From: Haliotis rubra
Lineage: Eukaryota
Direction of reading: 5' to 3'
Length of the DNA stretch: 64,000 nucleotides
Assembly (NCBI RefSeq): GCF_003918875.1
Contig: NW_025765448.1
Coordinates: forward strand, 124,001 to 188,000
The position numbers and the translations under genes were made by a program. Within the stretch, counting starts at the first letter, position 1. Every line of letters starts with the position of its first letter. Positions 1 through 60,322 of the stretch are shown in pieces. The notes beneath the pieces are model-generated. The model had not been told where the DNA came from, ran no database searches, and saw nothing but the letters and a program-made list of their open reading frames with translations.

Positions 1-958
1 GAAGGAATTATCTCTTGTGCCAATCTTATCTTACATGCATATCCTTAACGAAATACGAATGTACATTCTTTACTGAGAGGGTCCCAATTATAAGATATGA
101 CACATATGATCATTTTAGGTGACATTGTGTATTCATAGTTTTCCGCCGTTGGTGTGTGCCAATTTACACTTGTCAGATGGGTACACAAAATTCGTGATCT
201 ACACTACAGATTTACATTTTTATGTCCATACTGCCTTAATTCTATAAGTACTTACGAAATGGTGCCAGGAAGGCCACGAGATACCTGCCATTGGTTTATT
301 TTCCCTATGAGCCTCACTTCTCCCTGAATATTAGCTCCATATACATGTTGGTGGGTATTTACCAAAGTTGTGAAAGTCTACACATGCGACACATACAGCT
401 TTCCTTCCATTTTAAGATGGAAAGCCATGATGACGTGATTCTTAATCAACTCTCTACTCACCAACATGGTCTTTCCGGGTGATATCGCCACGACGTTGAT
501 GCTGATGGTGACGTCGATGGATTTTGGCAGAACGTACTAGAAAGATGTATTGTATTTATGTCCCACAATAATTCAACACCTCGTCATTGTCTTGTCCAGA
601 TTCGATTATTTACACAGCGCAGTCACATAGCTGGTCAATTGCGGAGTTAAGCAACAAGTAACAGACAATCAATATCTCGTTAAACGTATGTTAGACCACC
701 GTTTGACAACAGTACGTTTGGAAGACAAAAAAATATTCGTCTTTTTTTGGTTAGATTTCTACATTCAGGTAGAAAATTATACATCTTATTGGTACATTAT
801 TTGGTTTCATAAGTAAATGTACCACGGCATGATGTACCAGACATCCATGTATAAGCAAATACGTCTTAAATTAACAAACACTTTTCCAAGCACTGATAAT
901 ATCTAAATTGAAGCAAGGGTTGGCTTTCTCATATAGTAGTATATTCTACATACAGCAA
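1..958 (-). pseudogene. Gene A copy 0 (A0) remnant: intron 3, 3' end of exon 3 (462-524), then fused to intron 1 sequence
   Basis: 1-524 aligns to 5200-5673 and 13820-14320; 545-955 aligns to 6795-7225. Exon 2 and most of exon 3 are missing, and exon 1 is replaced by a LINE fragment. Confidence 0.75.
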
Positions 959-1430: not shown

Positions 1431-1811
1431 TTATTTACAAAACGCCGCCATATAGCTGGAATATTGCTCAGTGCAGCATAAAACTAAACTCACTCACTCA
1501 CTATTAAGGAACTAAATTAATTAGTGGTCCTTCTCCCTTTAACAGGAGTTTTAAGGGAGAAGGCGACATTTAGTGGTGAATTGTGCCCGATCCTTTTGTC
1601 TTCTTTTGCAAAATATGTTCAAAACATTAAAAAAATATATTTTTCAATAAAGTCTTTCCTCACAAATTACTGACATGCCACGAGATAATGCTGTGATCGA
1701 AGTTCAAATAAAATGAATGCTAAAATCAACACCAGAATGACCAAGGAATCATTTATTGAACTTCATTGCAAATAAAATGCTTTGAGAGCATCAAAAAGAG
1801 AGAAAATAACA

Positions 1812-2322
1812 TTATCCCCACACCTCGAGGTAGTACATCTTCGAGACTTCGGTGTCCCCGCTCGACGTGCTCACATAGTACGCTCCCTCTAAGGCTTCTG
1901 TAACGTTCTTGAACCGGAAGATCTTTCGACTGCGAAAGCCAGTTCCGATTGAGAACGTTTCCACTTCCGGTTCTGTAATCTCGCGACAGTCTCGAAACAA
2001 CTTCAGGACAGGGCGTTTATAATATAGTATGATTGTGGTTTTCAGTAACACTGCATGCTTATGAAAGTGTCTGAATATGATTGTGATTACAACAGTCTCC
2101 GTGTATGCTTGTGTTTGAATGATACTGCCTGTTTATGACATTGAGTATTATACGATCTTGTTTGAATGGTACTGAGTGTTAATAATGGTGCACGTGTATG
2201 ACTGTGTTTGAATGACTGCGTGCGTATGAGATGGTCTGTGCATGATTGTCTTTTCAACAACACTGGTGCATATGAAAGTGCAGGAGCAACGGGAGCAGCA
2301 CACCGACGCGCACAACCGCCAT
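1812..2322 (-). pseudogene. Gene B copy 0 (B0) remnant: last-exon 3' end (1812-2010) and partial exon 1 (2282-2322)
   Basis: PVLKLFRDCREITEPEVETF...MYYLEVWG matches B2. 2282-2322 matches the B2 signal exon, and the ~2 kb between is replaced by a 270-bp filler. Confidence 0.8.
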
Positions 2323-4330
2323 GTTGATGTAATGATTTTCTCTGTACCTTTGAAGGTCCCCCGTTAGAGCTAGTTCACCGGATGTCGATAATTTAGGCAT
2401 TCAGAGTTGAAATTAAACAAGTGATACTTGATAGTGCTGACATTTGTGTTGAGAGTGTCAACATATCCAGCATGTTATTTTTATTGAACAATTAACATCG
2501 TTGATTAATTATAACGAGGTGTATGAAGTCCGCTGGGTGCTTTACTGTCTGTGACTTGGCTTGAACGTTCACACGCCTGTCTGACACTGCCTGACACAGT
2601 GTTTGTGTGTGATTGTGTTTGAGTGACACTGGGCGTTTATAATATAGTATGATTGTGGTTTTCAGTAACACTGCATGCTTATGAAAGTGTCTGAATATGA
2701 TTGTGATTACAACAGTCTTCGTGTATGCTTGTGTTTGAATGATACTGCCTGTTTATGACATTGAGTATTATACGATCTTGTTTGAATGGTACTGAGTGTT
2801 AATAATGGTGCACGTGTATGACTGTGTTTGAATGACTGCGTGCGTATGAGATGGTCTGTGCATGATTGTCTTTTCAACAACACTGGTGCATATGAAAGTG
2901 TCTGTATGATTGTGCTTGAAGCACACTGAGTTATATTTGTTGTGTATGAGTGTGTTTTAAATGAAACTGTGTGCTTATGAAAGTGTTTCTTCGTGATTGT
3001 TTTAAAATACCAGCATGCTTGTAAAAGATTCTGAGTATTATTGTGCTTGAACTATGGTGTGTACTTATTCGATTAGGGGCATTTGGGTAGCCTAGTGGTT
3101 AAATCGTTCGCTCGTCACGCCGAAGACACGGGTTCGATTCTCCACATGAGTACAATATGTGACTCCCATTTACGGTGCCCCCCGAAGTGATGTTGCTGGA
3201 ATATTGCTATTGCTTATTAAACTCACTCACACACTTATTCGCTTGTGTCAAAATGAAATAGTGTATACAAGTGTTTGTTCATGGTTGTGTTTTCACTTAC
3301 ACTGCCTGCTTATGATAGTTGCTGTGCATGATTGTGTTTGTTTGTTTGAATGGTTGCACACTCAGCACTATTCCAGATATATGGAAACGGTCTGTAAAAC
3401 ATCTTGTCTAGACCAGACAAACCAGTGACCAACATCATGAGCATCGATCTACGCAATAGTAAGTGTTTGAGTGACAAGGCGTGAATATGATATTTCTGAA
3501 TATAAATATTATTGAATGGGTGATCTTGTTCACTGCAACTGCCGCTGTTCCAAAGTGTGGTATATACGAACACTTCACGTTACAATCACACCTATATACA
3601 ACCATAACATCCGTTAGCTATATTAATCAATTTACATATTATGATGTCAATTCTTTTATGAAATGGTAACACTTTTTTGTGAATATATATGCAATTTCAT
3701 AAAATCCGATACATGATAATATATACATACACACACATACGAACACTTCACGTTACAAGCTTATACCCTCTTTGCTAAGTTGTTTGTCCAGGTTAAGAAC
3801 TCGACCCAATACGGGTGCCATCGGATAGCACCCTACATTCAGAGTTTAGTAGGGATTAAGGGGCGGGTTGGTAGGAGTTGGGGTAGAGGTGCGTGCCAAC
3901 TGGTACTTGGTATAACATGTCAACATTTGGAAATGATATTGGGGACAGTAAATGTAAACGTATATTAACCAAATAGCTCTGATCTTGCACTTGACGTCAC
4001 AAGATGCACTGCACTCATAATTGAGTAACCTGGTGATCATATCGTTCACTCGTCACGCCGAAGATCCGGGTTCGATTCCCCACATGGGTACAATGTGTGA
4101 AGCCCATTATGGTGTCCCCCACCGTAATATTACTGTAATATTGCCAAAAGCGGTCTAAAACCTAACTCACTCACTCTTCACTGAGGGCTGTACTCACGGC
4201 TGAAAGTGAATCACAAAAGTTACGAAATATCACACTATGTAATGATCACATGCTCAGTCAAATGCTTCTTCGATCCGATTTATTACCTTGCTGACATTTA
4301 ACTAAATGACATTGAGGACGTTGATATTAA

Positions 4331-7300
4331 TTAAATGACATTGAGGACGTTGATGTTGAAATCAGCATTTGCCCTGCCCGTTCCATTACGTGACTTAATC
4401 TTGGCTACTGCCAGGTACCTCCCAGCTTGGGCCGAAGTCACTGACCGGAACCGGAAGTGGACCTCTCTTTCGAAGTAGCGTTTAACATCAGCAACAGGTT
4501 CTACCTTTTGCCTACTTCTCATGAGCGTGATATTTGGATATTCATACAATGATTCCCTCCATATATCTTCAACCTCACTGCCCCCAAAAGCCTTCAATTC
4601 CACATCGATGTCGCCGCCATTTTCAACATAGTAATTTCTCTCCACCTTGTCAAAAACAACTAGCCTTTCCGCAAACAAATGGGAAACAGGTGGTGGTTGC
4701 AGGAACAGCATGTACGTGACCTTGACCCCCGCAAACAGTACACATGACCTTGTCAAACTGAAGCCATTGGTGACTTTCAGAATGCCCCGGGGTAGGTCAC
4801 CGGATGAATTGTAGTTCACGTTCACACGCCGCACACTGTACCTTGGTTTATCAATAACAAATAACTCATCCAAATTGAGATTATCATCACGTGTAGGAGT
4901 AGTGACTTCAAGGAATTCGGAGTCTGATTCGGCAGTTCTGATCTTGATTCTTGGAGGAGTTATGCAGTCATTGATACTGGTGAACTCCGCTTTAAGGCCG
5001 TGCCATGTACCATGTCCAATGTCCTTTGCTTTGAAGGTTGTGCGGATAAGGATGGGATCTCCGGCGTTGTAGCTGACACGATCCTTTGGAGTCACTTTAT
5101 ACTCGTATTTGGGGATGTACTCCTAGAAGACAAGGACAGGACATAAAGATAACGGGACAGTACAAATCAGGGACAACAATAGTCCATCCTTGAAAAGAAT
5201 GACCTCTTGTGCCAATCTTATCTTATATGCACAGCAATTACCCTTAACGGAATACGTCTCAATTATAAGATATGACACATATGATCATTTTAGGTGACAT
5301 TGTGTGTTCATAGCCTTCGGCCACGGGGTGTGTACCAATGTACACTTGTCCGAAGGGTACACAGACTTCGTGATCTACACTACATACTTACCATTTTATG
5401 TCCATACTACGCGTAATTGTGTAAGTATTTTCGTACAAGGGATTCCTGCCATTGGTTTATATTCTCCATGAGCCTTACTATTCCTTGAATATTAGCCCCA
5501 TATACATGTTGGTGGGTATTTGCGGAAGTGGTAAAGATCTACACATGTGACACATTCGGTTTGTCACATTCCGTGACATAACGTGAATCTGAATCAACTC
5601 TTTACTCACCAACATGGACTTCCCGGGTGATATCGCCACGACGTTGATGGTGATGGTGACGTCGATGGATTTTCCTGCCAACTGGAGCTCAAGTGATTCG
5701 ATTTGGAAGGATCCTGGGATACGTATCGACGCCGTCTGGTACCAGTATTCGACTCCGTTGTGTGCCGTTTCATAACGGAAAATGCAACGTCCGTTCTGAG
5801 ACCATCATCACCATCTGTACAGAAAACAAACGTGTTCTTTTGGCTCAAGCTATCAGGTATGCAACGACTGAACGAACTGTAGCCGCATTGCGACTTTCCA
5901 TGTGTAAGGCGAATAATAGGAGCAAGCTAAACTGGAGCCAGGCTGAACGTGAATCCAACAACTTCTAATCGCCTACCACCCGCTTGATACGCACATGAAA
6001 AGTCAATAAATCATTTTAATCTCAAATAACCTCGGTTGATGGTACAAACGCGAATACAATAATTGTGTATTATTTCATAAAAACCCAAATGAAACAGATA
6101 CATAATAATAAATAGTATATGTAAATACAAAATATATGATGGCTGTAGCTAGTTTATGTTGTAAGGGATGATAGTTTTGATACAAATTTTGATAAATTGA
6201 TCATTTCTTTAGTGTCATAAAGTGACGACCATACACAGATAACTCACCTACACCGAGTTTTCCATTGATCCACCATAACGGGGTCACCTGCCTGGGAGAA
6301 TCATATCTAACGGTGACGTTCACAGCGCCGTTGTCGTTAGCCAAATAAATCGTCTTCGGGTTAAGCCATTGTTCTTGGTATTCTTCGAAGTTTGAGGAAG
6401 ACAGCTGAACAAAGATATTGTCAAATACTGATCGGAAAATCCTATCAAAATTGAGAAAACATTTATTCAAAACTGTACTGAAATATAGCTGCCCTACAAA
6501 ACAAAGTTTATGGAAACTGGATTTGGCTAAATTATGCCATATTAGGCTTGAAACAGTCGCTGAAAACAATTGTCCCAAACACGACTATGATGCACGCAGC
6601 TAACGTAACACCACAGAATAACCGTTTCCTGTTGTTTCATTTTACGCAACTATCAAACATGAGTGTATACTTTCTTTTGCCTGTCAGTATATAACAATGA
6701 TACATATATTCTTGATATATATAGATATTCTTGATCTGGGATAACCCATTAAGACTGTTCAATCCTCCTGGCATAATAATATAAACAAAAGGATTGTTGT
6801 ATTTATATCCCACAATAATTCAACACCTCATCGTCGTCCTGGTCCACATTCGGTTATTTACTCACGGCAGTCACATACCTGGCCAACTGTCGGATGCAGA
6901 GTCAAACAACAAATAAAAATAAACAATATCTCGTTAAACGTTTGACCACAGTTTGACAACGATACGTTTGGAAGACATAAACATATTCGTATGTATTTAT
7001 TTTGTTAGATTTCTACATTCAGGTAGAAAGTATACATTGTTTCCAGACGTGCTTACCATTTTATTGGTATAGTGATACATTATTTAGCTACATAAATAAA
7101 TCTACTTCAGTATGACGGATAAATGTTTCTTATATTAACAAACACTCCTTCCAAGCACTGATAATATCTAAACGGAAGAAAGGGTCGGTTCTCAAATAGT
7201 AGTATATTCTAAATACATCAATATTTTGTACGTGTTTTGAAATGAACATAATGAATTTCATCAGAAATAGCCAATATTCAGGGTATTTTAACCATGTTTT

Positions 7301-7381
7301 CGAATGATTGAAAGTGAAACTTACCCCATGAACGACTGCCAGAAGCAGAGTCAGTTGTAGCGCCACCAGTGTGGATGCCAT
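4331..7381 (-). pseudogene. Gene A copy 1 (A1), frameshifted
   Basis: Exons 7381-7325, 6404-6248, 5814(5994)-5610 and 5122-4331. Exon 3 is 205 nt vs 206 nt in A2 (1-nt deletion near 5780). It also has an AT acceptor at 5995-5996 and TAG at 5927-5929. The last exon is intact, with 8 aa differences from A2. Confidence 0.7.
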
Positions 7382-9024
7382 GATTCCAGATGTGTCCTCA
7401 ATGTCACGCTGCTGCAACTGAGCTCTCACTTTATCAACGAGCGGAAACAACAATTCCAGTCTCAGGCCATGACATTTAAATGCCCTACCATTATGTCAAA
7501 CAGAGGCTGAATTCATTTACCACGATGTTGTGTGAGTCATTGATTTCAGTGTTGACAACACATCGCCATGATACTATTCAAATGAAGTAAAGAAACATGA
7601 ACTGTACATCTTAAAACTGAGAATTCGAAAGACGAGAACTTCTATATGTAGAAGAACACGGCGACGAGGCGACTAACGGGATCGGGTGGTCAGGCTCGCT
7701 GACTTGGTTGACACATGTCATCGGTTCCCAATTGCGCAGATCGATGCTCATGCTGTTGATCACTTAATTGTCTGGTCCAGACTCGATTATTTACAGACCG
7801 CCGCCATATAGCTGGAATATTGCTGAGTGCGGCGTAAAACTAAATTCACTCCAACAGGATGTAGTCATGGATGTATTCGATCTATGCTTTATTCGCGCTC
7901 TAAAACCCCGTAAGGTAATGCACCTCCGAAAGAGATTATGCCAATGATTGCTAAAGCCTTAAAATATGCGAAACCGACCAGAAGATAAACAATGTAGCCC
8001 CCGCGAGCGAGAAACTACTGAATAATAGTAGGAGGCAAAATACGTTAATATTTTTATAACCCATATAAGACCCCCTTATCCACTTTATCTCTTGAACTGT
8101 TTTCATAAATAGTCTCCTGTCTGTCTGTGACTGATATATGTCCCCGGCGGGTAATTGGATATCTGTGCAAACTTCATGTTTACTTTATGTGAAGAGAGTT
8201 TTGCCTTGTATCCCAGAGTCGATAATATCTCGTTGTCAGCCAGATATCCAGTAAGTCGCCATCTATAGTAAAGTACGTTTAAAATAAACACGCTTATAAC
8301 AAAACGACTGGTATATCTGACTATTATTTGCATCCCAGAGTCGGTATCAGTCAAACATCCAGTAAGTCACAATCTACAGTAGACTTTGTTTAGAACAAAC
8401 ACGCTTTTAACGAACCAACTGGTATAGCTAACTATGGTTTTTGTCGATAATACTTCGTAATGAGCCATACATCCATCTACAGTTAAGTACGTTTAAAAAA
8501 GACAAGCTTATAACGAACCNNNNNNNNNNNNNNNNNNNNNNNNNNNNNNNNNNNNNNNNNNNNNNNNNNNNNNNNNNNNNNNNNNNNNNNNNNNNNNNNN
8601 NNNNNNNNNNNNNNNNNNNNNNNNNNNNNNNNNNNNNNNNNNNNNNNNNNNNNNNNNNNNNNNNNNNNNNNNNNNNNNNNNNNNNNNNNNNNNNNNNNNN
8701 NNNNNNNNNNNNNNNNNNNNNNCGGTTGTACATACAACTAACTATGGTTTATTAAGGAACTAAACTTAGTGGTTCCTTTGAGTAAGTTCTAACAGGAGTT
8801 TTAAGGCAGAAGCCGACTTGTGCCTGATCCTTTTGTCTTTTTTGTAAAATATGTTCAAAACAGGCTGAAAATGTATTTTTTAATTGGGTCTGACTCACAA
8901 AATAATGACATGCCACGATACAACGTTGAAATCAAAGTATAAACAAAACGAATGCTCAAATCAAAACACCAGAATGATCAAGGAATCATTTATTGAACTT
9001 CATTGCAGATGCTTTCACTTAACG

Positions 9025-11092
9025 TTATCCCAGGGCGTCAATGTAGTACATCTTCGAGACTACGGTTTCCCCGCTCGACGCGCTCACATAGTACGCTCCC
9101 TTTAAGGCCAATGTAACGTTCTTGAACCGGAAGAAGCCAGTTCCGATTGTGAACGTTTCCGCTTCTGGTTCTGTAATCTCGCGACAGTCTCGGAACAACT
9201 TCAGGACAGGTTTCGGATAACCCATGGCGTCAACCTGGGTGTATGGCCATCTCGTATGAATTACTTCATTGTTGTGTCTATTTTGAGGGTCGTCAACAAA
9301 ATTGACGCTGCTCCAAAATGGGGAACCGTGTCCACGATTCTTCACATACACCCAACGCCTGATTATGATTTTATCAAGAAGGCTGTACGCAGAGTTAACA
9401 CCTAACCGGACCGCAAATTTGACCTCTCCCTCGGTATAAGGGAACGCTGTGTTGATAGACGCCACGGTGCGCTCTATAGTCGACGTGGGGGGTGATGTTC
9501 AGAGGTGGTAAGATGAAAGAATTCCTTCTACGAAACCAGTGATCTTCCAAATATGGGATAGACCGGATGTGAGTTTCTAACGGAGGGAGCGATCTGTAAT
9601 CGAAAGAACTTAGTATCCCCATTGTGAAATCCATCTTAAACGATCCAAGGTTCTCAGACTCTAACGACAGACTGAAGTTAACCCGTTCATTTTCGTCAAA
9701 GTTCACGTGACCATCTGGCTGAGAACGGAACACCAGTTTGTTGATAGTTTTGCGTTCTAAGCGGCTGTTTCGAATATCTCCCTCCTGGAGAACAATTTGA
9801 TTTCGTAGTCGTCTCAATAGATGCAAGTCAGTATTTGTCGTTGAAGGTCTCTACGCCACGGATCTATGACCATATGAAGAGTTGTTTCCCCCTTCCGACC
9901 CCGAGTAGGTGTGGGTTGTGTTATCTAAATCGGAATTGCATTCATACATGGAATATGTCAGTGTTAATTACTTGGAGAGTTAAAACTGAGTATATTAATC
10001 ACACAATCTGGAGACAGATATTTAAACTGTTAAATTGTATCTGGGAATTGTCAGAAAAATATAGTGTTATCAGTATATGGGGTAAGTGAGTGAGTTTGGT
10101 TGTAGCAACTTTTAGAAATATTCCGACAATCTCACGTCGGGGGCACCAGAAATGGGCTTCACATATTGTGCCCATGTGGAGAATCGAACCCGGGTCTGAC
10201 GAGCGAACACTTCAAACACTAGGCTACCCCTCTGTAAATGGAGTGAGCGAGTAGTAGTGGTGTAACGATATACGACGGTACAATATTTTATTACCTACGA
10301 GGGAGAACATATCGGGGTTCATATTTTTCATACGATGCCCTTGGGCAAAAAATCACTTTGTCATGGTGACGTGACGTCATGAACAATGCTATGACGTCAC
10401 GTTTCTTCTGTGACTTTGCATTCAATATGCGGCGACGGTGGGTAGCTAGCCTATGTATGAAAGTATATATTTGGGTTCATTTTCCTCAATTTGACGACTT
10501 CGGTAATAAACAGAATATCATATTCGTGCCCATATCATACTATGTTTACGACACTCGTGCCTAAATATCGGTATATCCCTCGCTCTCGCTCGGGAAATAC
10601 CAACATTTAGGCACTCTCGTCGTAAACATAGTATGACATGGGCACTCATATAATATCCTCTATTTATTGCGATACGTATTGTATCGTCGTATCGTTACAC
10701 GTCAGTTATCTCCTGGCAATAACTGTATCAATTGCACGGAGAAAACCCTTCTCGCAAGAGGTGGGCTTCACACATTGCACAAATGAGAAACAAACTCGGG
10801 CCTCAGGCGTGACGAGCACACGTTTTAACCACAAAACCACCCACAGCCCCTCTGCATTTGGAAAACAGTATTATGCAATAAACTTGATTCAAAGGATGTC
10901 TGGACAATGCATTTTGAGATAACCAGGTTTGGTAGACATTTTAAAAGACTTAGTACTTACGGCTGACAAATTCATCGACCTTCCACAGCACAACAGGTCG
11001 GTTTTCCGCTCCGTACGTCACTGTAATGTTCCGCATGTCCCCTTCAACGGACAACTGGACATCGGTCACTACCGGGACACCTCTACAGACAC
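9025..11092 (-). pseudogene. Gene B copy 1 (B1), decayed
   Basis: Homologous to B2. Exon 1 and intron 1 are deleted (junction ~11110), exon 2 (11092-10961) has a 4-nt deletion, the exon 3 acceptor is lost (~9930), and there are extra bases in homopolymers near 9490 and 9890. Confidence 0.8.
10293..10662. mobile_element. Insertion specific to B1 intron 2, with a ~135-bp hairpin (10520-10656)
   Basis: Absent from the B2 equivalent site (~19610), flanked by TTTATT on both sides, with a long internal palindrome. Confidence 0.6.
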
Positions 11093-12953
11093 CTGGGAAA
11101 GATTCTCGTTAATTATAACGAGGTGCCAGTGAAGTCTGATTGTCGTCCACCTCTGGGTGCTTAACTGTGTGCTTGAATGTTTGCACGTCTGCCTGCTTAC
11201 AAGATTGTTTGTGTATGATTGTGTTTGAGTGACACTGAGTGTTTATGATATAGTACGATTGTGTTTTCAGTAACACTGCGTGCTTATGGAAGTGTGTGAG
11301 TATGATTGTGATTACAACAGTCTCCGTGTATGCTTGTGTTTGAATGATACTGCCTGTTTATGGCATTGAGTATTATACGATCTTGTTTGAATGGTACTGA
11401 GTGTTAATAATAGTGCATGTGTCTGGCTGTGTTTGAATGGTACTGAGTGTTAATAATAGTGCATGTGTATGACTGTGTTTGAATGACTGCGTGCGTATGA
11501 GATGGTCTGTGCATGATTGTCGTTTCAACAACACTGGTGCTTATGAAAGTGTCTGTATGATTGTGCTTGAAGCACACTGAGTAATATTTGCTGTGTATGC
11601 TTGTGTTTTAAATGAAACTGTGTGCTTATGAAAGTGTTTGTTCATGATTGTTTTAAAATACCATAGCATGCTTGTAAAAGATTCTGAGTATTGTTTGCTT
11701 GAACTATGGTGTGTGCTTATTCGATAAGGGGCATTTGGGTAGACTAGTGGTTAAAGCGTGGCCGAAGACCCGGGTTCGATCCCCACATAAGTACAATATG
11801 TGACCCCCATTTACGGTGTCCCCCGATGTGATGTTGCTGGAATATTGCTATAAGCGGCGTAAAACTAAACTCACTCGCTTACTCGATTGTGTTAGAATGA
11901 CATGGTGTTTACAAGTGTTTGTTCATGGTTGTGTTTTCACTTACACTGCCTGCTTATGATAGTTGCTGTGCATGATTGTGTTTGTTTGTTTGAATGGTTG
12001 CACACACAGCACTATTCCAGCTGTATGGAAACGGTCTGTAAAACATCTTGTCTGGACCACACAAACCAGTGATCAACATCATGAGCATCGATCTACGCAA
12101 TAGTCAGTGTTTGAGTGACAAGGCGTGAATATGATATTTCTGAATGTAAATATTATTGAATGGGTGATCTTGTTCACTGCAACTGCCGCTGTTCCAGAGT
12201 TCGGTATATACGAACACTTCACGTTACAATCACACCTATGTACAACCATAACATCCGTTAGCTATATTAATCAATTTACATATTGTCATGTAACTCATTT
12301 TATGAAATGGTAACACTTTTTTGTGAATATATATGCAATTTCATAAAATCCGATACATGATAATATATACATACACACACATACGAACACTTCACGTTAC
12401 AAGCTCATTCCCTCTTTGCTAAGTCGTTTGTCCAGGTTAAGAACTCCACCTAATACGGGTGTAATCGGTAAGCATAATACATTCAGAGTTTTGTAGGGAT
12501 TAAGGGGCGGGTTGGTAGGAGCTGGGATAGAGGTGCGCGCCAATTGGTACTTTGATGTGTCCGTAACATGTCAACATTTGGAAACGGTATTGGGGACAGT
12601 AAATGTAAATGTATAAGCAAACAGTTGTGATCTTGCACTTGACATCACAGGATGCATTGCTCCCTTTACTGAGGGTGCGGTGGGGTAGTCTCGTGCACAC
12701 GTCACGCCGAAGATCCGGGTTCGATTCCCCACATGGGTACAATCTGTGAAGCCCATTTCTGGTATGCCCCACCAACATGATATTGCTGGAATGTTGCTAA
12801 AAGCGGCCTAAAACTAAACACTCACTTTTTCACAGAGCGCTGTACCCACGGTTGAAAGTGAATCACCACAGTTACGAAATATCACACTATGTAATGATAA
12901 CATGCTCAAGCAAATGCTTCTTTAATCCGGTTTATTACCTTGCTCACATTTCA

Positions 12954-15900
12954 TTAAATGACATTGAGGACGTTGATGTTGAAATCAGCATTTGCCCTGC
13001 CCGTTCCATTACGTGACTTAATCTTGGCTACTGCCAGGTACCTCCCAGCTTGGGCCGAAGTCACTGACCGGAACCGGAAGTGGACCTCTCTTTCGAAGTA
13101 GCGTTTAACATTAGCAACAGGTTCTACCTTTTCCCTACTTCTCATCAGCGTGATATTTGGATATTCATACAATGATTCCATCCATATATCTTCAACCTCA
13201 CTGCCCCCAAAAGCCTTCAATTCCACATCGATGTCGCCGCCATTTTCAACATAGTAATTTCTCTCCACCTTGTCAAAAACAACTAGCCTTTCCGCAAACA
13301 AATGGGAAACAGGTGGTGGTTGGAGGAACAGCATGTACGTGACCTTGACCCCCGCAAACAGTACACATGACCTTGTCAAACTGAAGCCATTGGTGACTTT
13401 CAGAATTCCTCGGGGTAGGTCACCGGATGAATTGTAGTTCACGTTCACACGCCGCACACTGTACCTTGGTTTATCAATAACAAATAACTCATCCAAATTG
13501 AGATTATCATCAAGTGTAGGAGTAGTGACTTCAAGGAATTCGGAGTCTGATTCGGCAGTTCTGATCTGGATTCTTGGAGGAGTTATACTGTCATTGATAC
13601 TGGTGAACTCCGCTTTGAGGCCGTGCCATGTACCATGTCCAATATCCTTTGCTTTGAAGGTTGTGCGGACAAGGATGGGATCTCCGGCGTTGTAGCTGAC
13701 ACGACCCTTTGGAGTCACTTTATACTCGTATTTGGGGATGTACTCCTAGAAGACAAGGACAGGACATAAAGATAGCGGGACAGCACAGATTAAGGACAAC
13801 AATATGGTATCCCTGGAAAGAAAGATCTCTTGTAACAATCCCAGCATATCCTTAACGAAATACGACTGTACATACTTTACTGAGACGGTGCTAATTATAT
13901 TATATATAACATATGATCATAGTAGGTGACATTGTGTATTCATAGGATTTAGCCGTGGGTTGTGTGCTAATGTACACTTGTCAGAAGGGAACACAAAGTT
14001 CGTTATCTACACTACAGACTTACATGTTTGAGCTCATACTGCGTTTAACTGTGTAAGTTAGGAAGGTCACGTGATATCTCCCATTGGTTTATATTCTCCA
14101 TGAACCTCACTTCTCCCTTGAATAGTAGCCCCTTATACATGTTGGTGGGTCTTTTCCAAAGTGGTAAAGGTCGACACAAGCGACACATACAGCTTTCCTT
14201 CCATTGTAAGATGGAAAACCATGATATAACGTGGTTCTTAATCAACTCTTTACTCACCAACATGGACTTCCCGGATGATATCGCCACGACGTTGATGGTG
14301 ATGGTGACGTCGATGGATTGTCCTGCCAACTGGAGCTCAAGTGATTCGATTTGGAAGGATCCTGGGACATGTATCGACGCCGTCTTGTACCAGTAATCGA
14401 CTCCGTTGTGTGCCGTTTCATAACGGAAATAGACAATGTCCATTCTGAGACCATCATCACCATCTGTACAGAAAACAAACGTGTTCGTTTTGGCTCAAGC
14501 TATCAGGTATGCAACGACTGAACGAACTGTAGCCGCATTGCGACTTTCCATGTGTAAGGCAAGTTCTAACTGGAGCAGGCTAAACTGGAGCCAGGCTGAA
14601 CGTGAACCCCACAACTCCTTGTCGCCTTCCACCCCCTTGATATGCACATGAAAAGAATATCAGCACGACTGTTTCCCATACAAAGATAAGTGAGTGAGTG
14701 AGTTAAAATGTCACCTCGCCAATATTTCCGCAATATCGTGACGACCATACACAGACCATAACTCACCTACACCGAGTTTTCCATTGATCCACCATAACGG
14801 GGTCACCTGCCTGGGAGAATCATATCTAACGGTGACGTTCACAGCGCCGTTGTCGTTAGCCAGATAAATCGTCTTCGGGTCAAGCCATTGTTCTTGGTAT
14901 TCATCGAAGTTTGAGGAAGACAGCTGAACAAAACAGATTGTCAAATACTGATCGGAAAATCCCATCAAAAGTGAGACAATATATATCCCAAACAGAACTG
15001 AACTATAGCTGCCCTACAAAACAAAGGAGTTAGCTAAATTATTCCCGCTTTATCGAAACGATATTAGGCTTGAAACAGTCGCTGAAAACAATTGTCCCAA
15101 ACACGGCTATGATGCACGCAGCTAACGTAACACCACAGAATAACCGTTTCCTGTTGTTTCATTTTACGCAGCTATCAAACATGAGTGTATACTTTCTTTT
15201 GCCTGCCAGTATATAACAGTGTTATATGCGAATTGTATCATCTTGTATGTTCTAGTGTTCTAGTCATATATATACATGTATGTATGTACGTAAGATATAA
15301 ATGTCTGTATATATAACGCCTGTGGGAGACAATACTAGACTGACTAACTGAGTTTGGTTGCGCTGGTCAGACCAAAGTCAGCAACGATAGGGGTTGACGG
15401 GGGTTCACATGACGTTATTTTGGGGGGACTATAGTCTCTTATAAAACAAGTTAGAAATTCATGTTACAAAAGTATATATAAGTCTACTATTTACGCCGCT
15501 TTTAGCAATATTCCAGCAACATCACGGCGGGGAACACCAGAAATGGGCTTCACACATTGTACCCATGTGGGGATTCGGACGCGGGTATTTTGTATTCGTT
15601 TGTATTTTGTTAGATTTCGACATTGAGATTTAAAAGTGTACATTGTTTCCAGACGTGCTTACCATTTTATTGGTATAGTAGTACATTTTGTAGCTACATA
15701 AATAAATCTACTGCAGTATGACGCAACAGCATACATTTCTTATATTGACAAACACTTTTTCGAAGCACGATAATATCTAAACGGAAGAAAGAGTCGGCTC
15801 TCAGATAGTAGCACATCAATATTTTGTACATGTTTTGAAATAATCATAATGAGTTTTATCAGAAATAGCCAATATTCAGGGTATTTTAACCATGTTTTCG

Positions 15901-15979
15901 AATGATTGAAAGTGAAACTTACCCCATGAATGACTGCCAGAAGCAGAGTCAGTTGCAGGGCCACCAGTGTGGACGCCAT
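12954..15979 (-). CDS. Gene A copy 2 (A2): 4-exon gene for a ~403 aa secreted protein with a C-terminal Cys-less Ig-like domain; open only via an internal acceptor
   Basis: Exons 15979-15923 (MASTLVALQLTLLLAVIHG, phase 0), 14923-14767 (phase 1), 14463-14258 (acceptor tttgttttctgtacag, phase 0) and 13745-12954. Phases are compatible with no stop. The C-terminal FRFRSVTSAQAGRYLAVAK resembles Ig E-F strands. Confidence 0.65.
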
Positions 15980-18301
15980 GATTCCAGATGTGTACCCGAT
16001 GTCACGCTGCTTCAACTGAGCTCTCACTTTATCAACGAGCGGGAACAACAATTCCAGTCTCAGGTCATGACATTTCAGTGTCCTACCATTATGTCAAACA
16101 GAGGCTGAATTTATTTAACACGATGTTGTGTACCATCAGTTACCTTGTAGATAGAAACATGAATTACTTTAATATGATAGAAGATTACAGTGGTAAGAAT
16201 GGACCTTAGATTGAGTACGATACCTTACGTTTGTGTTACATATTGATAATGAAGTAGTGGTTGAGGTCTGTGATATGCGTAATGCTATTGATTAGGTATG
16301 AAACAATGGAGTATTTGGTAATATGGATAATAATATAATACTATTTAAAGCAGTGAGGATTTAAGTGAAACGTAAAATGCCTTTATCAAATAAATGACTC
16401 CCATATATTTTAGGTTTAGTGCAGGATGAAGATGAATCCCCGTCATAGTGATTCTCATCGTAGGACTGACGCCTGGGCAATTGTCAAGTAGTAGTTAAAT
16501 GCATACATCTATGTTTTCCTCCAGTCACTACATTTCTTTGATAGGACAACGCTCAAATATTCCATATTCCAACATCGGGATATATCAAAATGTTGATTAG
16601 TTATTTCAGGGGACGTTACCTTCCCTTCACAGATATCCACTGCGTTCAGTGGTGCTAACTCTGAGTTCTACGTGGACGTGAGTTGTTTATGTTCTTCTTT
16701 CGCATGCGGGTGAGGGTTGTTACCTTCAGACCGTGGATGACGGTCGCATTCTTCTCGTCTCTCGCTCGCGGGGGCAAGATTGTTTATCTTCTGGCGGGTT
16801 TCGCTTACCTTAAGTACTCATTAGCATAAGCTGTTTCGGAGGTGCATTACCCTACGGTGTTTTAGCTCAGGTAAAACGTGACGACAAAACATACTTGATA
16901 GTTTGTACATGCCCCGCATAGTCCCTGGGCGACATTCCCGATGTTGACAACTTGGCCCGATAAATCTCTAAAACTGTATTTTCGTCGTTCTTCTTGGTTC
17001 AGCTCATCCCAAAATTGTAATTAACCTCTTTATTCTTATATTAGTTTGTGTGTGAACTTGCAATGTGGAGTACATAAAGTTTCAGAGTATATTCTTACTT
17101 CTTCTTCGGCGGAATGAAATAAAAAAAGACTAAGAATATACCCCGAAATGTTCTCAAAATACAGAAGTTGACATCCATAAATGTGTATAGATTCTTTTTT
17201 AAAACTACTCGAAGTGCTTACGACTATCAACCTGTGCCAAAACGTCTACTTCTGTTAAACGTGACGCCAAAGCACATTAAATAGTTTGCACGTGCCTCAT
17301 ACAGTATCCTGGTGACTTGTAGCGATAAGTGTATTTTCGTGAATTGTCTTGGTTCTGCTCATTAGAAAATTGTAACTAACCTGATGTATTCTTTGCTTGT
17401 ACATGTGGAGAGTTGAGTTTGCAATCAGGTCTACGGTCTATTGCTAGGCTTTAAACTGACAGACCTCAATGGGTTCGATGTGTCCGGGAGTGTGATAGAA
17501 CACTGTGTAACAGGTGCCCCAAAAATCTAATAGGTTCCGGACAGACTCTATTCAGCACGCCCCTGGTAAACAAGTGTCCAACATGCTACATGCTACATAT
17601 TTTCAACATGCCACTGGCGTCAGAGTTACAGGTCAGACTGTGAGAAATCGTCTGTGCCATCCACATTGCCACTGTATACTAGGCATATAAAGAAACTGTG
17701 CATACAAAAATTTAGATTCTAAATTTATCAAACCTGTGTAGACACATAAGGATTTAAACTTAGAGATTAGTGACATGTATCCAACATGCATGCGCGTGCC
17801 GCGTTCCGTGACAGCAGTGGGTTCGTCCTTGAGACGTGCAGTACGTTGCTGCACGTGCATTCCGGGGAAAGAGAAACAGAGCAAATGAATGCCACACAAT
17901 ACTGTCACTTTGAAAAGCTCAACCCCTACCCTTGCGATCGTTCAAAAAGTTAAACGGCTATTGAAACGCATAGCATGCCTGTATCATTATAGATACAAGG
18001 ATCTACGGTTATTAAGAAACTAAACTTAGTGTTCACTGCGTTACAACAGTTTTAAGGGAGAAGGCGACATTTAGTCGTGACTTGTGCCGAATGTTTTTTT
18101 GTGCTTATTGTAAACAGGAAAGAAATGTATTTTTCAATTGGGTCTTTCCTCACAAAACACTGACATGCCACGATAACGCTGTAATCAAAGTTCAAATAAA
18201 ATGAATGCTAAAATCAAAACACCAGAATGATCAAGAAATCATTTATTGAACTTCATTGCAAATAAAATGCTTTCAGAGCATCAACAAGGCAGAAAGGAAC
18301 G

Positions 18302-20626
18302 TTATCCCAAGACGTCAATGTAGTACATCTTCGAGACTTCAGTGTCCCCGCTCGACGCGCTCACATAGTACGCTCCCTCTAAGGCTTCTGTAACGTTCTT
18401 GAACAGGAAGATCTTTCGGCTGCGAAAGTCAGTTCCGATTGTGAACGTTTCCACTTCCGGTTCTGTAATCTCGCGACAGTCTCGGAACAACTTCAGGACA
18501 GGTTTCGGATAACCCATGGCATCGACCTGGGTGTACGGCCATCTCGTGTGAATTACATCATTTCTGTGCCTGTTTTGAGGGTCGTCAACAAAATTGACGC
18601 TGTTCCGAAAGGGTGAAAGGTGTCCACGATTCTTCACATACACCCAACGCCTGATAATGATTTTATCAAGAAGGCTGTACGCAGAGTTAACATCTAAACC
18701 CACCGCAAATTTGACCTCCCCCTCGGTATAAGGGAACGTTGTGTCGATAGACGCCACGGTGCGCTCTACAGTGGACGTGGGGGTGATGTTCAGAGGTGGT
18801 AAGATGAAAGAATTCCTTCTACGAAACCAGTGATCTTCCAAATATGGAATGGATCGTATGTGAGTTTCTAATGGAGGGAGCGCTTTGTAATCAAAAGAAC
18901 TTAGTATCCCCACTGTGAAATCCATCTCAAACGATCCAAGGTTCTCAGACTCTAAGGACAGACTGAAGTTGACGCGTTCAGTTTCGTCAAAGTTCACGAG
19001 ACCATCTGGCTGAGAACGGAACACCAATGGGTTAATAGCGTTGCGCTCTAAGCGGCTGTTTCGAATATCCCCCTCTTGGAAGAACAAGTTGATTTCGTAG
19101 TCGTCTCCATAGATGCAAGTTAGTATTTGTCGTTGAAGTTCTCTACGTTCCGGATCTATGTACATATGAAGAGTTGTTTCCCCTTCCGATCCCGAGAAGG
19201 TGTGGGTTGTGTTATCCAGATCTGCAAATCATGTGATGTAATCTGAATTATAGTCATACATGGAACATGGCCGGGTTAATTACTTGAAGAGTTAAAACTG
19301 AGCATATTAATTAAACAATATGGAGACAGATATTTGAACTGTTAAATTGCATCTCGGATTAGTCAGACACATATAGTGTTATCCGTACATGGGGTGAGTG
19401 ATTGACTTTAGTTTTAGCAACTGTCAGCAACATTCCGACAATATCACGTTGGTGGCCACCAGGAAATAGGCTTTACATATTGTGCCCATGTGGGGAATCG
19501 ACCCCGGGTCTGACGAGAGAACACTTTAACCACTACACTACTCTACCAGTCTCTGTCAATGGAGTGAGTGAGTAGGCGTGGTGTAACGATACCACAATGC
19601 AATATTTTATTTCGATACGTATTGTATCGTCGTATCGTTACACCTCTTTTATCCCCTAGCAATAACTCCAGCAATTTCAGGGAGAAAACTCTTCTCGCAA
19701 GAGGTGGGCTTCACACACTGTACAAATGAAAAACGTCCTCGAGCCATACGTTTAAACCGCAAAACCGCCCACAGCCCCTCTGCATTTGGAAACCAGTATT
19801 ACACAATACAATTGATTAACAGGATCTCAGGACAATGCATTTTAAGAGACTGGGTTTGGTAGACGTTTTTACTTACGTCTGAGAAATTCATCGACTTTCC
19901 ACAGCACAACAGGTCGTTTTTCCGCTTCGTACGTCACTGTAATGTTCCGCATGTCCCCTTCAACGGACAACTGGACATCGGTCACTACCGGGACACCTCT
20001 ACAGACACACACCTGGGGAATAGCAAATTCTCGTTCTACTCGGCTTTAGGCAATATTCTGTCAAACATACGACGAGAAGCACCAAACACACATGCTTCTA
20101 CACATATACCTGTGAGGAACCGAACACGGGCTTCGGTGTGACGAGCGAACACTTTATCCAAATGTCCATTAAAAGACATTAAAACTTAGATCATCTTACA
20201 AAGTGCTATTTTGAACTTGGAATTCTAACCACAACATATGTAGAGTGGTCTTAAACTAAAGAGGTATGCATTAAAAAAGGTTACGCTTTAACCAGTGTAA
20301 TCATTCTTCACACTTAACTTTGAGAATAACATTAAGCGTATAAAACCGACTACAAAAGGCATCAAGCACGACCCTGCCTATCCCAAAATACCCGACTAAT
20401 TCGGGTCGACCTGTCCGTCTCTGTAACTTGAGTGTTGAGTATTTTTCTCGACATCGTGTACAGTCAACATTTCCCTATACCAGCTTAGATCAATTGTTGT
20501 CCCGATGAATAAATGAAACCGATATGCAATTTATTCTTAAAGTTACTGAAAATCTCGACATGCATCACTTACCGTCTGTAGCACGAAGAGCAAAGGGAGC
20601 AGCACACCGACGCGCACAACCGCCAT
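18302..20626 (-). CDS. Gene B copy 2 (B2): intact 3-exon gene for a 369 aa secreted protein with a C-terminal Cys-less I-set-like Ig domain
   Basis: Exons 20626-20573 (MAVVRVGVLLPLLFVLQT signal peptide, phase 0), 20012-19877 (phase 1) and 19221-18302, all GT-AG and in frame with ORF 18302..19165. The C-terminus VDAMGYPKPVLKLFRD...FKNVTEALEGAYYVSASSG matches the I-set strand pattern without the B/F Cys. Confidence 0.8.
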
Positions 20627-22876
20627 GTTGATGTAATGATTTGCTCTGAACCTTTGTCAGTGCTGGTTCACCGGATGTCGATAATTTAGGCATTCAGAGA
20701 TGAAATCAAGCAAGTGACACGTGATAGTGCTGACATTTGGGTTGAGAGCATCAACATATCCAAAATGTTTTTTTTATTGAACAATTAACATCGCTGATTA
20801 ATTATAACGAGGTGATTATGAAGTCAAATTGTCGTCCACCTTTTGGTGTTTAACTGCCTGTGGCTGAGCTTGAACGTTCACACGTCTGCCTGCTTACAAC
20901 AGTTTGTTTGTGTATGATTGTGTTGAGTGACACTGGGCGTTTATGATATAGTATGATTGTGGTTTTCAGTAACACTGCATGCTTAAGTCTCACTAACTTT
21001 AATTACTCGCAGGTGCGATGGGGTATACTAGTGACAGAAGCGTCGATGAACCAGGTTCGATTCTCCACGCTCGTACAATGTAGGAAGTTCATTTATGGTG
21101 ATCCCCGCCGTGATATTGCTGGAGTATAGCTAAAACAGCGTAAAACCATACTCACTCACTCACCCATTCACTCACAATGTACATGGTGGGTTGGAATTGG
21201 TTCAAACCTTGTCCCCAAAATATGAAGTCTTAGGAATTTACTTTTATATGTATATCACAATAAGGTAACATACCATGCAAACACTTAAAACAACATTTAC
21301 AGAATGACCACCAAGTTATGTCTGCGTGCTGCTTTACTCATCCTTGTTCTCAAATAAGCAACTAGATACCATCACCTGCTGCTTCTTATGCCATATCATG
21401 CGGTACTATTGCAGGAACTATATCTCAAGTCCCATGAGACCACAGTGCCCTTGACTTTGTCTTTGTCTGCAATATATTGCATGTTTATGCACCAGGAAGT
21501 GACTTAACCAACAGGTGATCTGGTCAAATGAAGACATTGTTTTCGTTGACACTTCAACTATATAACTTATTTAATGACTTCAGAGTGTCACGACATATTC
21601 AGGAGGGCGGCGATGATTCCCGTGCAGGGACGTGTCCCAACCCCGTCTTCAAAATATCACTTGATCACCAGTCACGAGACATTGCACTCCGTTAGGTTCC
21701 ACTTGCAGCATTAGAGTATAAGCTATCCTAGGATAGATCCCTCCAGATCACGTGATCCCAGAACTGAAACCCTCCAGAGTGAAATTATCCTGGGATGGAA
21801 ACACACCCCTTCGAGCATCAAACCACACCCCTCAGGATAAAACCAACCCCTTTGAATAAAATAATAAAGTAAAGGGGTACAATATGCCAGCTATTCGGTC
21901 TGTAAATAATGGACCAGATAATCCAGTGATTGGCATCATGAGCATCGATCTACGCAGGTCATCGAGCCGGAAAGGTAAAGGGAAATATTTGCAATGATGA
22001 CACTGACTTTGATAGCAGTAAGAGCAACGGGACTCAGTTCAGAGAGCCAGAGTGCGGAAAGTAGATCATTAATATTTTCTGAATATACCATAAATGTGAC
22101 AATTGCCGATGTATGTACACAGATGATGATGCATATATACTTGAAGAACAAAAAACATGTTTTGTAAACGAAATTGTGTCTACACGTTGCATGACGAATA
22201 CTTCAACTGAATTCAACGAACATATAGTTTTAGCAAAATATCTCGCCGGTGGGCAAGAATGGCTTCCTTAAAAGTCAAGCTTTAGGGGTTGTGTATGACT
22301 GAAAGTGAGTCTGTACAGATCATGACACAAAACTGAACCTATTTTGAAAAATTAAAATATCCCGCCCGTAGGCGATGGCAGTTAGGTCCATGGACTAGAG
22401 TATTCACCATTGCTCGAAGCTCAAAATGCTTGTTTTGGGGCTGCATATTATGAAAGAGCCTCTTCAGGCATAGTGACACAGACGGCATCGTATTTGAACT
22501 AATTAAGGTTATTACATTTTTAAAAAATAAAATAAAATAAATAGATTATGAAAAGTAAAATAAAATAAATGTATTATAATATCTCGCCTATGCTGAAACC
22601 AAAACGAGGGATTCGATGGGATTCCCCCTAAAACCCGTAAAGTCCTGTGCCTGACTGAAATGTTATTCGATATTCTATCTGGGGGGAGTTATTCATACCT
22701 AACCCTGGAGACAAGGAACAAATTTCTGGAGTACCTCTGTGATTTATCAGATACATTACTTACTTAGTGATATCAACATCATTTGAGATTTCTTCCTGGT
22801 AGGTTGGATATACAAGATCAATATATAGCTGATTTGATTGGTTAAGAAACGTTGATGCCATGCCAAACTGTACACG

Positions 22877-60065: not shown

Positions 60066-60322
60066 GAATACATCTTATGGATGTCAACTTCCTGATTATG
60101 AGGAGCACAACGTTACAGAGTACTTACGCTTTCATCAGGTACATACTCCGAAACCTTGTGTTCCTCATAATAAAGACGTTGACATCCATAAAATCCTCTT
60201 TCTCATTTATATGATAGTATTTTAAGTCCTTCCACAACATCAACTATTACCGTTGCTACCATAACTAATGCAGCTTCTACGAATGCTATACTTCCATTGC
60301 TAAAGTCTACAACAAACTATTG

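What the first reader, a model, noticed from the sequence alone, without database searches (positions are those of the whole stretch)
4331..20626. Uncharacterised paired family of secreted, cysteine-less Ig-like proteins (genes A and B) amplified together as a tandem unit
Seen: two different genes alternate A-B-A-B-A-B. Both have an 18-19 aa signal exon (phase 0) and a short exon 2 (phase 1). The exon 2 peptides align (A: NVTVRYDSPRQVTPLWWING; B: NITVTYEAEKRPVVLWKVDE), and both proteins end in an Ig-like domain lacking the canonical B/F-strand disulfide. Neither has a TM segment. Inference: A and B are ancient paralogs that now duplicate as a pair, as expected for subunits of a heteromeric secreted product or a fast-turnover recognition family (mucus, egg coat, shell matrix or immune). 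I do not recognise either as a named gene.
Basis: partly seen in the sequence, partly recalled or inferred. Interest (0 to 1): 0.72.

Follow-up and report, generated by a model that had tools for sequence, protein, structure and literature searches.

The report
Abalone secreted three-Ig gene pair array
This stretch of blacklip abalone DNA holds repeated copies of two neighbouring genes for secreted proteins built from three antibody-like (Ig) domains; they are distant relatives in an unstudied snail-only family, about half the copies are decayed, and their function is unknown.

Summary
On the minus strand of Haliotis rubra contig C558, two multi-exon genes alternate B-A-B-A. There are four units, and the array runs about 24 kb to the left of the window. 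Both genes have an 18-19 aa signal exon (phase 0) and a short exon 2 that ends in phase 1.

New here:
- A and B are homologous along their full length (hhalign probability 95%, E 4e-8) once distant relatives of A are added to its profile.
- Both fold as three tandem Ig-like domains with a C-terminal I-set domain (Z about 13, rmsd 1.8-1.9 Å). They lack the canonical disulfide but are not free of cysteine.
- The family is not confined to abalone. Relatives of A occur in Gigantopelta, Batillaria and Nucella.
- A third abalone paralog, C, passes Pfam's I-set threshold.
- Inside the finding's span only A2 and B3 are intact. A1 has a 1-nt deletion in exon 3, and B2 lacks exon 1 and has frameshifts.
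- The N gap lies between genes.
- Paralog dN/dS is about 0.3, and no domain is hypervariable.

The heteromer and fast-recognition ideas remain untested because no RNA or reads tool was usable. My verdict is a real but ordinary birth-and-death tandem array of a divergent, unannotated IgSF subfamily. The scan holds no earlier report of this family on other DNA.

The parts
456..523 (-). A0 pseudogene: the last 62 nt of exon 3. Its exon 4 lies just left of the window (C558:123140-123933) and carries two 2-nt deletions. Exons 1 and 2 are absent.
1808..2328 (-). B1 remnant: the first 39 nt of exon 1 with its 5' flank (2328-2284) and the last ~200 nt of exon 3 (2012-1808). The rest is deleted.
4331..7381 (-). 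A1 gene copy: exon 4 4331-5122, exon 3 5610-5814, exon 2 6248-6404, exon 1 7325-7381. A 1-nt deletion at position ~30 of exon 3 shifts the frame; everything else is intact. Exons are 95-98% identical to A2 and introns 78-84%.
   Evidence: truncated 265-aa model P0006
8520..8722 (.). Assembly gap (N) in the spacer between the B2 stop and the A1 start. It lies in no exon or intron. Homology to unit 2 resumes just to its right (8726-8775 against 17987-18034).
9021..11097 (-). B2 pseudogene: exon 3 (~9025-9930) with +1, -1, +1 and -15 nt indels; exon 2 (~10961-11092) with a 4-nt deletion at the acceptor; exon 1 deleted.
12954..15979 (-). A2, the intact A gene: exon 4 12954-13745, exon 3 14258-14463, exon 2 14767-14923, exon 1 15923-15979 (signal peptide MAST...IHG). 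About 403 aa.
18302..20626 (-). B3, the intact B gene, which is RefSeq LOC124270243 (P0010, 369 aa): exon 3 18302-19221, exon 2 19877-20012, exon 1 20573-20626.

Best explanation
The region is a tandem, birth-and-death array of a two-gene block in the blacklip abalone (Haliotis rubra).

Shown. Each block carries B then A, head to tail on the minus strand. Both genes encode soluble proteins with a signal peptide and several N-glycosylation sequons. Each protein is built from three tandem Ig-like beta-sandwich domains, the last a clear I-set domain, and the canonical B-F disulfide is missing. A and B are very divergent paralogs, about 15% identical. They belong to a gastropod-restricted, uncharacterised branch of the immunoglobulin superfamily. 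That branch also includes a third abalone paralog C (LOC124262960, on another contig) and single proteins in Gigantopelta, Batillaria and Nucella. The block has been copied repeatedly by segmental duplication: an older 'type 1 / type 2' split that is seen in the Californian species, then a recent amplification to four units in H. rubra. Most surplus copies are decaying. A2, B3 and B0 are intact. A1 carries one frameshift. A0, B1, B2 and probably A(-23k) are pseudogenes.

Inferred. The proteins act outside the cell as non-enzymatic binding modules, in soluble adhesion or recognition in the manner of other secreted multi-Ig proteins. Purifying selection on the intact copies means they are in use. 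The ligand, the tissue, and whether A and B work together are all unknown.
For: Species and genes. B3 is XP_046561237.1 and B0 is XP_046561248.1 of H. rubra, on a contig of 1,859,519 bp, which is the length of C558.

Array..

Copy status..

Secretion. There is an N-terminal hydrophobic signal only, no later hydrophobic stretch, and 4-5 NxS/T sequons.

Fold.
- The AF2 models have pTM 0.75 (A ortholog P0007) and 0.77 (B3 itself, P0010).
- Foldseek's best hits for both are three-Ig tandems: titin I67-69, DIP Ig1-3 and PTPdelta Ig1-3, at E about 1e-8.
- VIA-align gives the C-terminal domain of B Z 13.2 at 1.9 Å over 96 residues, and that of A Z 13.2 at 1.8 Å over 92 residues, both against I-set domains.
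- The ESM Atlas neighbours of both are soluble three-Ig receptors.

Homology chain.
- The A profile finds Gigantopelta at 1e-46, Batillaria at 5e-22 and Nucella at 3.5e-20.
- A against C: probability 99.4%, E 9e-22, full length.
- A against B: probability 95%, E 4e-8, 325 columns.
- C passes Pfam I-set with 39.8-43.8 bits against a cut-off of 23.7.

Shared gene structure. A, B and C all have the signal exon and the phase-1 intron at the same place in domain 1.

Selection. dN/dS is 0.29-0.41, and A1 against A2 shows exons far better kept than introns.

Pair duplication through time..
Against: - That the genes are transcribed rests only on RefSeq models here and in four congeners.
- Pfam finds nothing in A or B themselves.
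- The structure models are of medium confidence (mean pLDDT 72-74) and rest on shallow alignments of 8 and 16 sequences. Parts of domain 2 are poorly modelled.
- The A model is of the H. asinina ortholog (88% identical in exon 4), not the window's own protein.
- The A+B grouping in the tree has weak support (50/83) and B sits on a very long branch, so the age of the A/B split is open.
- An assembly gap lies inside the array.
- The binding function is inference from fold class alone.
Confidence: 0.75

Rival explanations
1. A and B are obligate partners. They form a secreted A/B heteromer, and selection keeps them adjacent and duplicates them together to hold the dosage balanced.
For: A-B adjacency is implied in four Haliotis species by consecutive RefSeq identifiers. 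The two genes have the same orientation and short spacing. The A and B trees have congruent 'type 1 / type 2' topologies. All H. rubra units contain both genes.
Against: Tandem paralogs are adjacent by descent, and a segmental duplication copies whatever lies in the block, so no selection is needed. Intact copies are unbalanced in H. rubra, with 2 B against 1 A. H. rufescens has three B models against two A, and H. cracherodii three B against one A. The relatives outside Haliotis surfaced only as A-like proteins, and no B-like protein was hit. No complex model could be run.
Confidence: 0.12
2. The family is a fast-evolving recognition system, immune, mucosal or gametic, under diversifying selection, and copy-number turnover supplies new specificities.
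For: Orthologs are only 63-73% identical between H. rubra or H. asinina and the Californian species. Amplification and loss are lineage-specific. Secreted multi-Ig proteins serve in mollusc and insect immunity: MDM, hemolin and FREPs (review PMC11999971).
Against: Pairwise dN/dS between paralogs is 0.29-0.41, which is net purifying. Divergence is even over the three domains, with no hypervariable domain. Extra copies mostly decay rather than diversify. I measured no baseline rate for other abalone proteins.
Confidence: 0.2
3. The repeated units are an assembly artefact: haplotigs or a mis-joined scaffold, not real tandem copies.
For: A 203-N gap lies inside the array, at a point where homology between units breaks. 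A RefSeq model (P0026) mixes residues of two copies.
Against: The units differ by 10-20% in non-coding DNA and each carries its own private deletions, insertions and frameshifts. That is far more than allelic difference. Several A and B genes are also annotated in H. rufescens and H. cracherodii.
Confidence: 0.04

Closest known systems
I-set immunoglobulin domains in tandem (titin I-band/M-band Ig, Drosophila DIP Ig1-3, sDscam Ig1-3, PTPdelta Ig1-3)
   Same: Both A and B model as three consecutive Ig beta-sandwiches. The C-terminal domain superposes on I-set domains at Z about 13 and rmsd 1.8-1.9 Å over 92-96 residues. The F-strand motif G-x-Y-x-x-x-A and the B-strand/Gly-Pro pattern are recognisable. 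Like titin Ig domains, they lack the B-F disulfide.
   Different: Sequence identity is 8-18%. Pfam I-set does not reach threshold in A or B. The proteins are soluble and secreted, neither intracellular like titin nor membrane- or GPI-anchored like DIP, IgLON, Dscam and PTPdelta. Domain 2 has long, poorly modelled insertions.
Soluble invertebrate immune IgSF proteins: insect hemolin and Lymnaea molluscan defence molecule (MDM)
   Same: Secreted proteins made only of Ig domains, with no transmembrane or catalytic part. These are the nearest functional analogy in molluscs and insects (review PMC11999971).
   Different: Hemolin has four Ig domains and MDM five, with canonical cysteines; that is my own knowledge, and the review says only 'multiple Ig-like domains'. 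Here there are three domains without the disulfide. No sequence match to them surfaced in any search, and I have no data on hemolymph expression or induction.
Biomphalaria FREPs (IgSF + fibrinogen domain) and related gastropod VIgL proteins
   Same: Gastropod secreted proteins with divergent IgSF domains, encoded by multigene families that expand and diversify.
   Different: A and B have no fibrinogen, lectin or other C-terminal effector domain. I saw no sign of hypervariability.
Soluble three-Ig decoy or accessory receptors (poxvirus OPG204 interferon-binding protein, IL-1RAcP ectodomain, PDGFR-like protein)
   Same: These are the top language-model neighbours of both A and B (scores 0.89-0.93). 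They have similar length and three Ig domains. 3oq3_B also appears among the structural matches of A.
   Different: This is similarity of class only. No alignment or E-value supports kinship, and scores at that level also occur by chance, as the tool's own note warns.

Membership tests
Immunoglobulin superfamily, I-set domain (Pfam PF07679, clan Ig) | Ig-like beta-sandwich of the I-set topology | tested here: met
   The C-terminal domains of B3 (res 269-369) and of the A ortholog (res 309-420) match I-set domains at Z 13.2 with rmsd 1.9 and 1.8 Å over 96 and 92 residues. Whole models match three-Ig tandems.
Immunoglobulin superfamily, I-set domain (Pfam PF07679, clan Ig) | Sequence match to the family HMM above the curated threshold | tested here: not met
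   A and B give no Pfam hit, even at E up to 1. The feature is met only indirectly. Paralog C scores 39.8-43.8 bits against a cut-off of 23.7, and C links to A at probability 99.4% and A to B at 95%.
Immunoglobulin superfamily, I-set domain (Pfam PF07679, clan Ig) | Conserved B-strand and F-strand cysteines forming the intradomain disulfide | tested here: not met
   The F-strand position is V in B (GAYYVSAS) and A in A (GRYLAVAK). Paralog C keeps only the F-strand Cys (GRYICTA). Absence of the disulfide is known in bona fide I-set domains such as titin, so it does not exclude membership.
Immunoglobulin superfamily, I-set domain (Pfam PF07679, clan Ig) | Invariant Trp of strand C | tested here: inconclusive
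   In domain 1 a Trp (W56 of B3) is invariant in all 16 aligned sequences. In domain 3 no column is an invariant Trp; my reading of that alignment puts Phe or Leu at the equivalent position. I assigned strands from the alignment, not from coordinates.
Hemolin / MDM-type soluble immune IgSF | Four to five canonical Ig domains, hemolymph protein regulated by infection | tested here: not met
   Three domains here.
FREP / VIgL (IgSF plus lectin-type effector domain) | C-terminal fibrinogen-related, C-type lectin or galectin domain after the IgSF domains | tested here: not met
   The proteins end with the I-set domain, and no such Pfam domain is found.
IgLON / DIP-type three-Ig cell-adhesion molecules | Membrane attachment (GPI signal or TM) after three Ig domains | tested here: not met
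   There is no C-terminal hydrophobic tail. The highest Kyte-Doolittle windows lie only in the signal peptide.

The most novel reading that the evidence does not exclude
A and B are the two chains of a gastropod-specific secreted Ig heteromer. The genes co-duplicate as a unit and the copies turn over between species, giving abalone a lineage-specific soluble recognition system, mucosal-immune or gamete/egg-coat, built on disulfide-free Ig domains.
Probability: 0.1. Interest if true: 0.6.

Novelty: new member of a known kind. Interest (0 to 1): 0.3.

Why it matters
The result gives a fold and a family context to proteins that RefSeq lists only as 'uncharacterized' in five Haliotis species and three other gastropods. 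They form a snail-restricted branch of the immunoglobulin superfamily that Pfam misses in two of its three abalone lineages. It corrects local annotation: which copies are intact, a truncated model, and a model that mixes two copies. It also offers a clean small example of two diverged paralogs duplicated repeatedly as a block, with most copies dying. Secreted multi-Ig proteins are plausible players in abalone immunity, mucus or reproduction, all relevant to aquaculture, but nothing here shows such a role. The finding is useful rather than surprising.

Tried and rejected
- Pfam on the large exons and on full-length A and B gave no hit.
- The PDB sequence search gave only a marginal titin Z1Z2 hit for the C-terminus of B (E 0.0014) and nothing for A.
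- Direct tests of A against B were inconclusive: BLASTP E 0.1, and hhalign with Haliotis-only profiles probability 3%. Homology showed only after the A profile was enriched with distant gastropod sequences.
- The HMMER search of 1.84 billion representatives with the A profile did not retrieve B.
Those proteins start at internal Mets of the last exon and say nothing either way.
- Literature searches by LOC and XP numbers found nothing. General searches found only broad IgSF and shell-proteome papers.
Exons were searched by reference. For folding I used proteins returned by the searches: P0010, which is B3's own RefSeq product, and the H. asinina A ortholog P0007.
- The positive-selection idea was checked only by pairwise Nei-Gojobori dN/dS on paralogs. 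No ortholog CDS was available.
- The tree cannot date the A/B split. The A+B side of a branch has support of only 50/83, and B is on a long branch.
Full report
**What is there.** The window is C558:124001-188000 of a 1.38-Gb genome. The best protein matches are RefSeq proteins of Haliotis rubra encoded on a contig of 1,859,519 bp, which is the length of C558. Self-comparison shows direct repeats offset by about 8.6 kb (2779-7533 against 11430-16131) and about 9.3 kb (8869-10292 against 18123-19611).

Six-frame searches of the whole genome with the two large exons place four A copies and four B copies, alternating, all on the minus strand of this contig. In window coordinates, and in the direction of transcription, they run as follows:
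- B3: 20626-18302
- A2: 15979-12954
- B2: about 11097-9021
- A1: 7381-4331
- B1: remnant at 2328-1808
- A0: from 523 to about -869, straddling the window's left end
- B0: about -4660 to -8578
- A(-23k): about -21000 to -23690

**Gene models.** I read these directly from the sequence and checked them by script.
- A2 has four exons. Exon 1 is 15979-15923 and encodes MASTLVALQLTLLLAVIHG, in phase 0. Exon 2 is 14923-14767 and ends in phase 1. Exon 3 is 14463-14258 and ends in phase 0. Exon 4 is 13745-12954.
- B3 has three exons. Exon 1 is 20626-20573 and encodes 18 aa. Exon 2 is 20012-19877 and ends in phase 1. Exon 3 is 19221-18302.

All donors and acceptors are canonical. B3 is exactly RefSeq XP_046561237.1 (P0010, 369 aa). 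B0 is XP_046561248.1 (P0001).

Exons were searched by reference, and full-length proteins used later are ones the searches returned.

**The gap.** The N run at 8520-8722 lies between the B2 stop (9025) and the A1 ATG (7381). It is in no exon or intron of any model. To its right, homology with unit 2 resumes at 8726 (against 17987). To its left, the spacer is unrelated to unit 2 apart from an inverted repeat fragment. The gap does not affect any reading frame. It does mean the order and number of units rests on a scaffold join.

**State of the copies (measured against A2 and B3).**
- A1: exons 1, 2 and 4 are intact and 94-98% identical, but exon 3 has a 1-nt deletion near its position 30 that shifts the frame. 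A 265-aa database model (P0006) accordingly starts at the Met near the end of exon 3.
- B2: exon 1 is deleted, exon 2 has a 4-nt deletion at its acceptor, and exon 3 has +1, -1, +1 and -15 nt indels. It is dead.
- B1: only the start of exon 1 and the last ~200 nt of exon 3 remain.
- A0: exons 1 and 2 are gone and exon 4 has two 2-nt deletions.
- A(-23k): exon 3 has a 59-nt deletion, exon 4 has in-frame indels, and exon 1 was not found. It is probably dead.
- Intact copies: A2, B3 and B0.

A1 and A2 are 95-98% identical in exons but only 78-84% in introns, and dS in exon 4 is 0.04. Either both were under constraint until very recently, or their exons are homogenised by gene conversion. The A1 frameshift may even be an assembly error, which I could not test.

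**What the proteins are.** Pfam finds nothing in A or B. The PDB sequence search gives only a marginal titin Ig hit for the C-terminus of B.

The word-based protein search finds only 'uncharacterized' Haliotis proteins, from rubra, asinina, rufescens and cracherodii.

The full HMMER search with the A profile adds these relatives:
- Gigantopelta aegis, E 1e-46
- two unnamed ENA proteins
- Batillaria attramentaria, E 5e-22
- Nucella lapillus, E 3.5e-20

The A lineage is therefore gastropod-wide.

A profile search of the H. rubra genome also finds a third paralog, C, at C2702:411-414 kb (LOC124262960). The C-terminal domain of C passes Pfam's I-set threshold (39.8-43.8 bits against 23.7).

C aligns to the A profile over its full length (probability 99.4%, E 9e-22). 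B aligns to the enriched A profile over 325 colinear columns (probability 95%, E 4e-8). With Haliotis-only profiles the same A-B test had failed (probability 3%).

A, B and C share the 18-19 aa signal exon and a phase-1 intron at the same place in domain 1.

**Fold.** The AF2 models are of medium quality. P0007, the H. asinina A ortholog, has pLDDT 72 and pTM 0.75. P0010, which is B3 itself, has pLDDT 74 and pTM 0.77.
- Foldseek's best matches for both are three-Ig tandems at E about 1e-8: titin I67-69, DIP Ig1-3 and PTPdelta Ig1-3.
- The Foldseek-independent aligner superposes each C-terminal domain on I-set domains at Z 13.2. The rmsd is 1.9 Å over 96 residues for B and 1.8 Å over 92 for A. 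It aligns two to three domains with tandem-Ig chains.
- Language-model neighbours of both are soluble three-Ig receptors.

Neither protein has a hydrophobic stretch after the signal peptide, and both carry 4-5 N-glycosylation sequons.

The canonical B-F cysteines are absent. The proteins are nonetheless not cysteine-free. B3 has C99 and C312, plus two cysteines that probably go with the signal peptide. A has an invariant Cys in domain 2. Most family members outside H. rubra and H. asinina A end in a Cys.

**Evolution.**
- In the tree, B sits on a very long branch. A and B fall on one side of a weakly supported branch (50/83) against C, Gigantopelta and the caenogastropods. The A/B split predates the Haliotis species sampled, but its upper age is open.
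- The best tree places a Californian 'type 2' lineage outside the rest in both the A and the B clade, with weak support.
- H. rubra keeps only a stop-ridden type-2 B fragment on contig C286.
- Consecutive RefSeq identifiers suggest A-B adjacency in H. rufescens, H. asinina and H. cracherodii. This is inference, because those genomes could not be read here.
- Paralog dN/dS is 0.29-0.41, and divergence is even across the three domains.

The pattern is repeated duplication of the block, purifying selection on survivors and decay of the rest.

**Function.** Nothing here shows function. The supported statement is structural: these are soluble, glycosylated, non-enzymatic three-Ig proteins. By analogy with other secreted multi-Ig proteins (hemolin, MDM, FREP Ig regions; review PMC11999971), I infer extracellular binding or recognition.

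The heteromer idea has only adjacency in its favour, and copy numbers are unbalanced. The diversifying-recognition idea is weakened by the dN/dS values and the lack of a variable domain.

Note s1-325416 proposes rescue of a damaged A2 exon 3 by a cryptic acceptor. I find A2 exon 3 (14463-14258) to have a normal acceptor. It is equal in length to the H. asinina and H. cracherodii exon and is used unchanged by a RefSeq model. The damaged exon 3 copies are those of A1 and A(-23k).

**Verdict.** This is a real but ordinary tandem birth-and-death array of a divergent, unannotated IgSF subfamily restricted to gastropods.

Noticed in passing
window 12954-14965 and C558:123140-123933 (left of window): RefSeq XP_046561247.1 (P0026, LOC124270254, 398 aa) matches A2 exons 2 and 3 at 100%. 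It starts at an ATG inside intron 1, so it has no signal exon. Its last ~60 residues carry the five residues typical of the A0 pseudogene copy, not of A2. It looks like a gene model confused by the tandem copies.
   Followed up: partly
window 4331-7381 vs 12954-15979: A1 and A2 exons are 95-98% identical while their introns are only 78-84% identical, and dS of exon 4 is 0.04. This suggests exon-limited gene conversion or recent constraint on both copies.
   Followed up: partly
L005 (C2702:408001-418000) 2895-5710, + strand: Third paralog C (LOC124262960, 377 aa). It has three exons with the same signal exon and phase-1 intron, its C-terminal domain passes Pfam I-set, and it keeps the F-strand Cys and a terminal Cys.
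   Followed up: yes
L004 (C286:74001-84000) 4882-5563, + strand: B-like fragment with two stop codons. It is closer to the Californian 'type-2' B proteins (65%) than to H. rubra B (51%), so it is a dead remnant of a second B lineage.
   Followed up: partly
window 26767-30000+: Large satellite of about 34-bp units, more than 3 kb long, with strong negative GC skew.
   Followed up: no
window 60307-61776: AT-rich satellite (GC 0.29) with a unit of about 33 bp. It gives long spurious ORFs on both strands.
   Followed up: no
window 35636-36052, 48944-49591, 50866-51222, + strand: Exon-like ORFs with sushi/CCP-like and ephrin-receptor-like cysteine-rich motifs. This is probably an unrelated multi-exon extracellular gene downstream of the array. 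I judged it from the translations only.
   Followed up: no
window 32482-32931 (-), 35316-35729 (-): Fragments that look like a mariner/Tc1-type transposase and a reverse transcriptase, read from the ORF translations only. Many tRNA-derived SINE copies lie in the introns and spacers of the array (repeat families D5, D11 and D13).
   Followed up: no
window 2008-3012 and 11193-11696, 20891-20965: A local 620-bp tandem duplication (2008-2392 against 2628-3012, 99%) and a minisatellite-like repeat of about 115 bp lie just upstream of the B genes. In B2 this region replaces exon 1.
   Followed up: no
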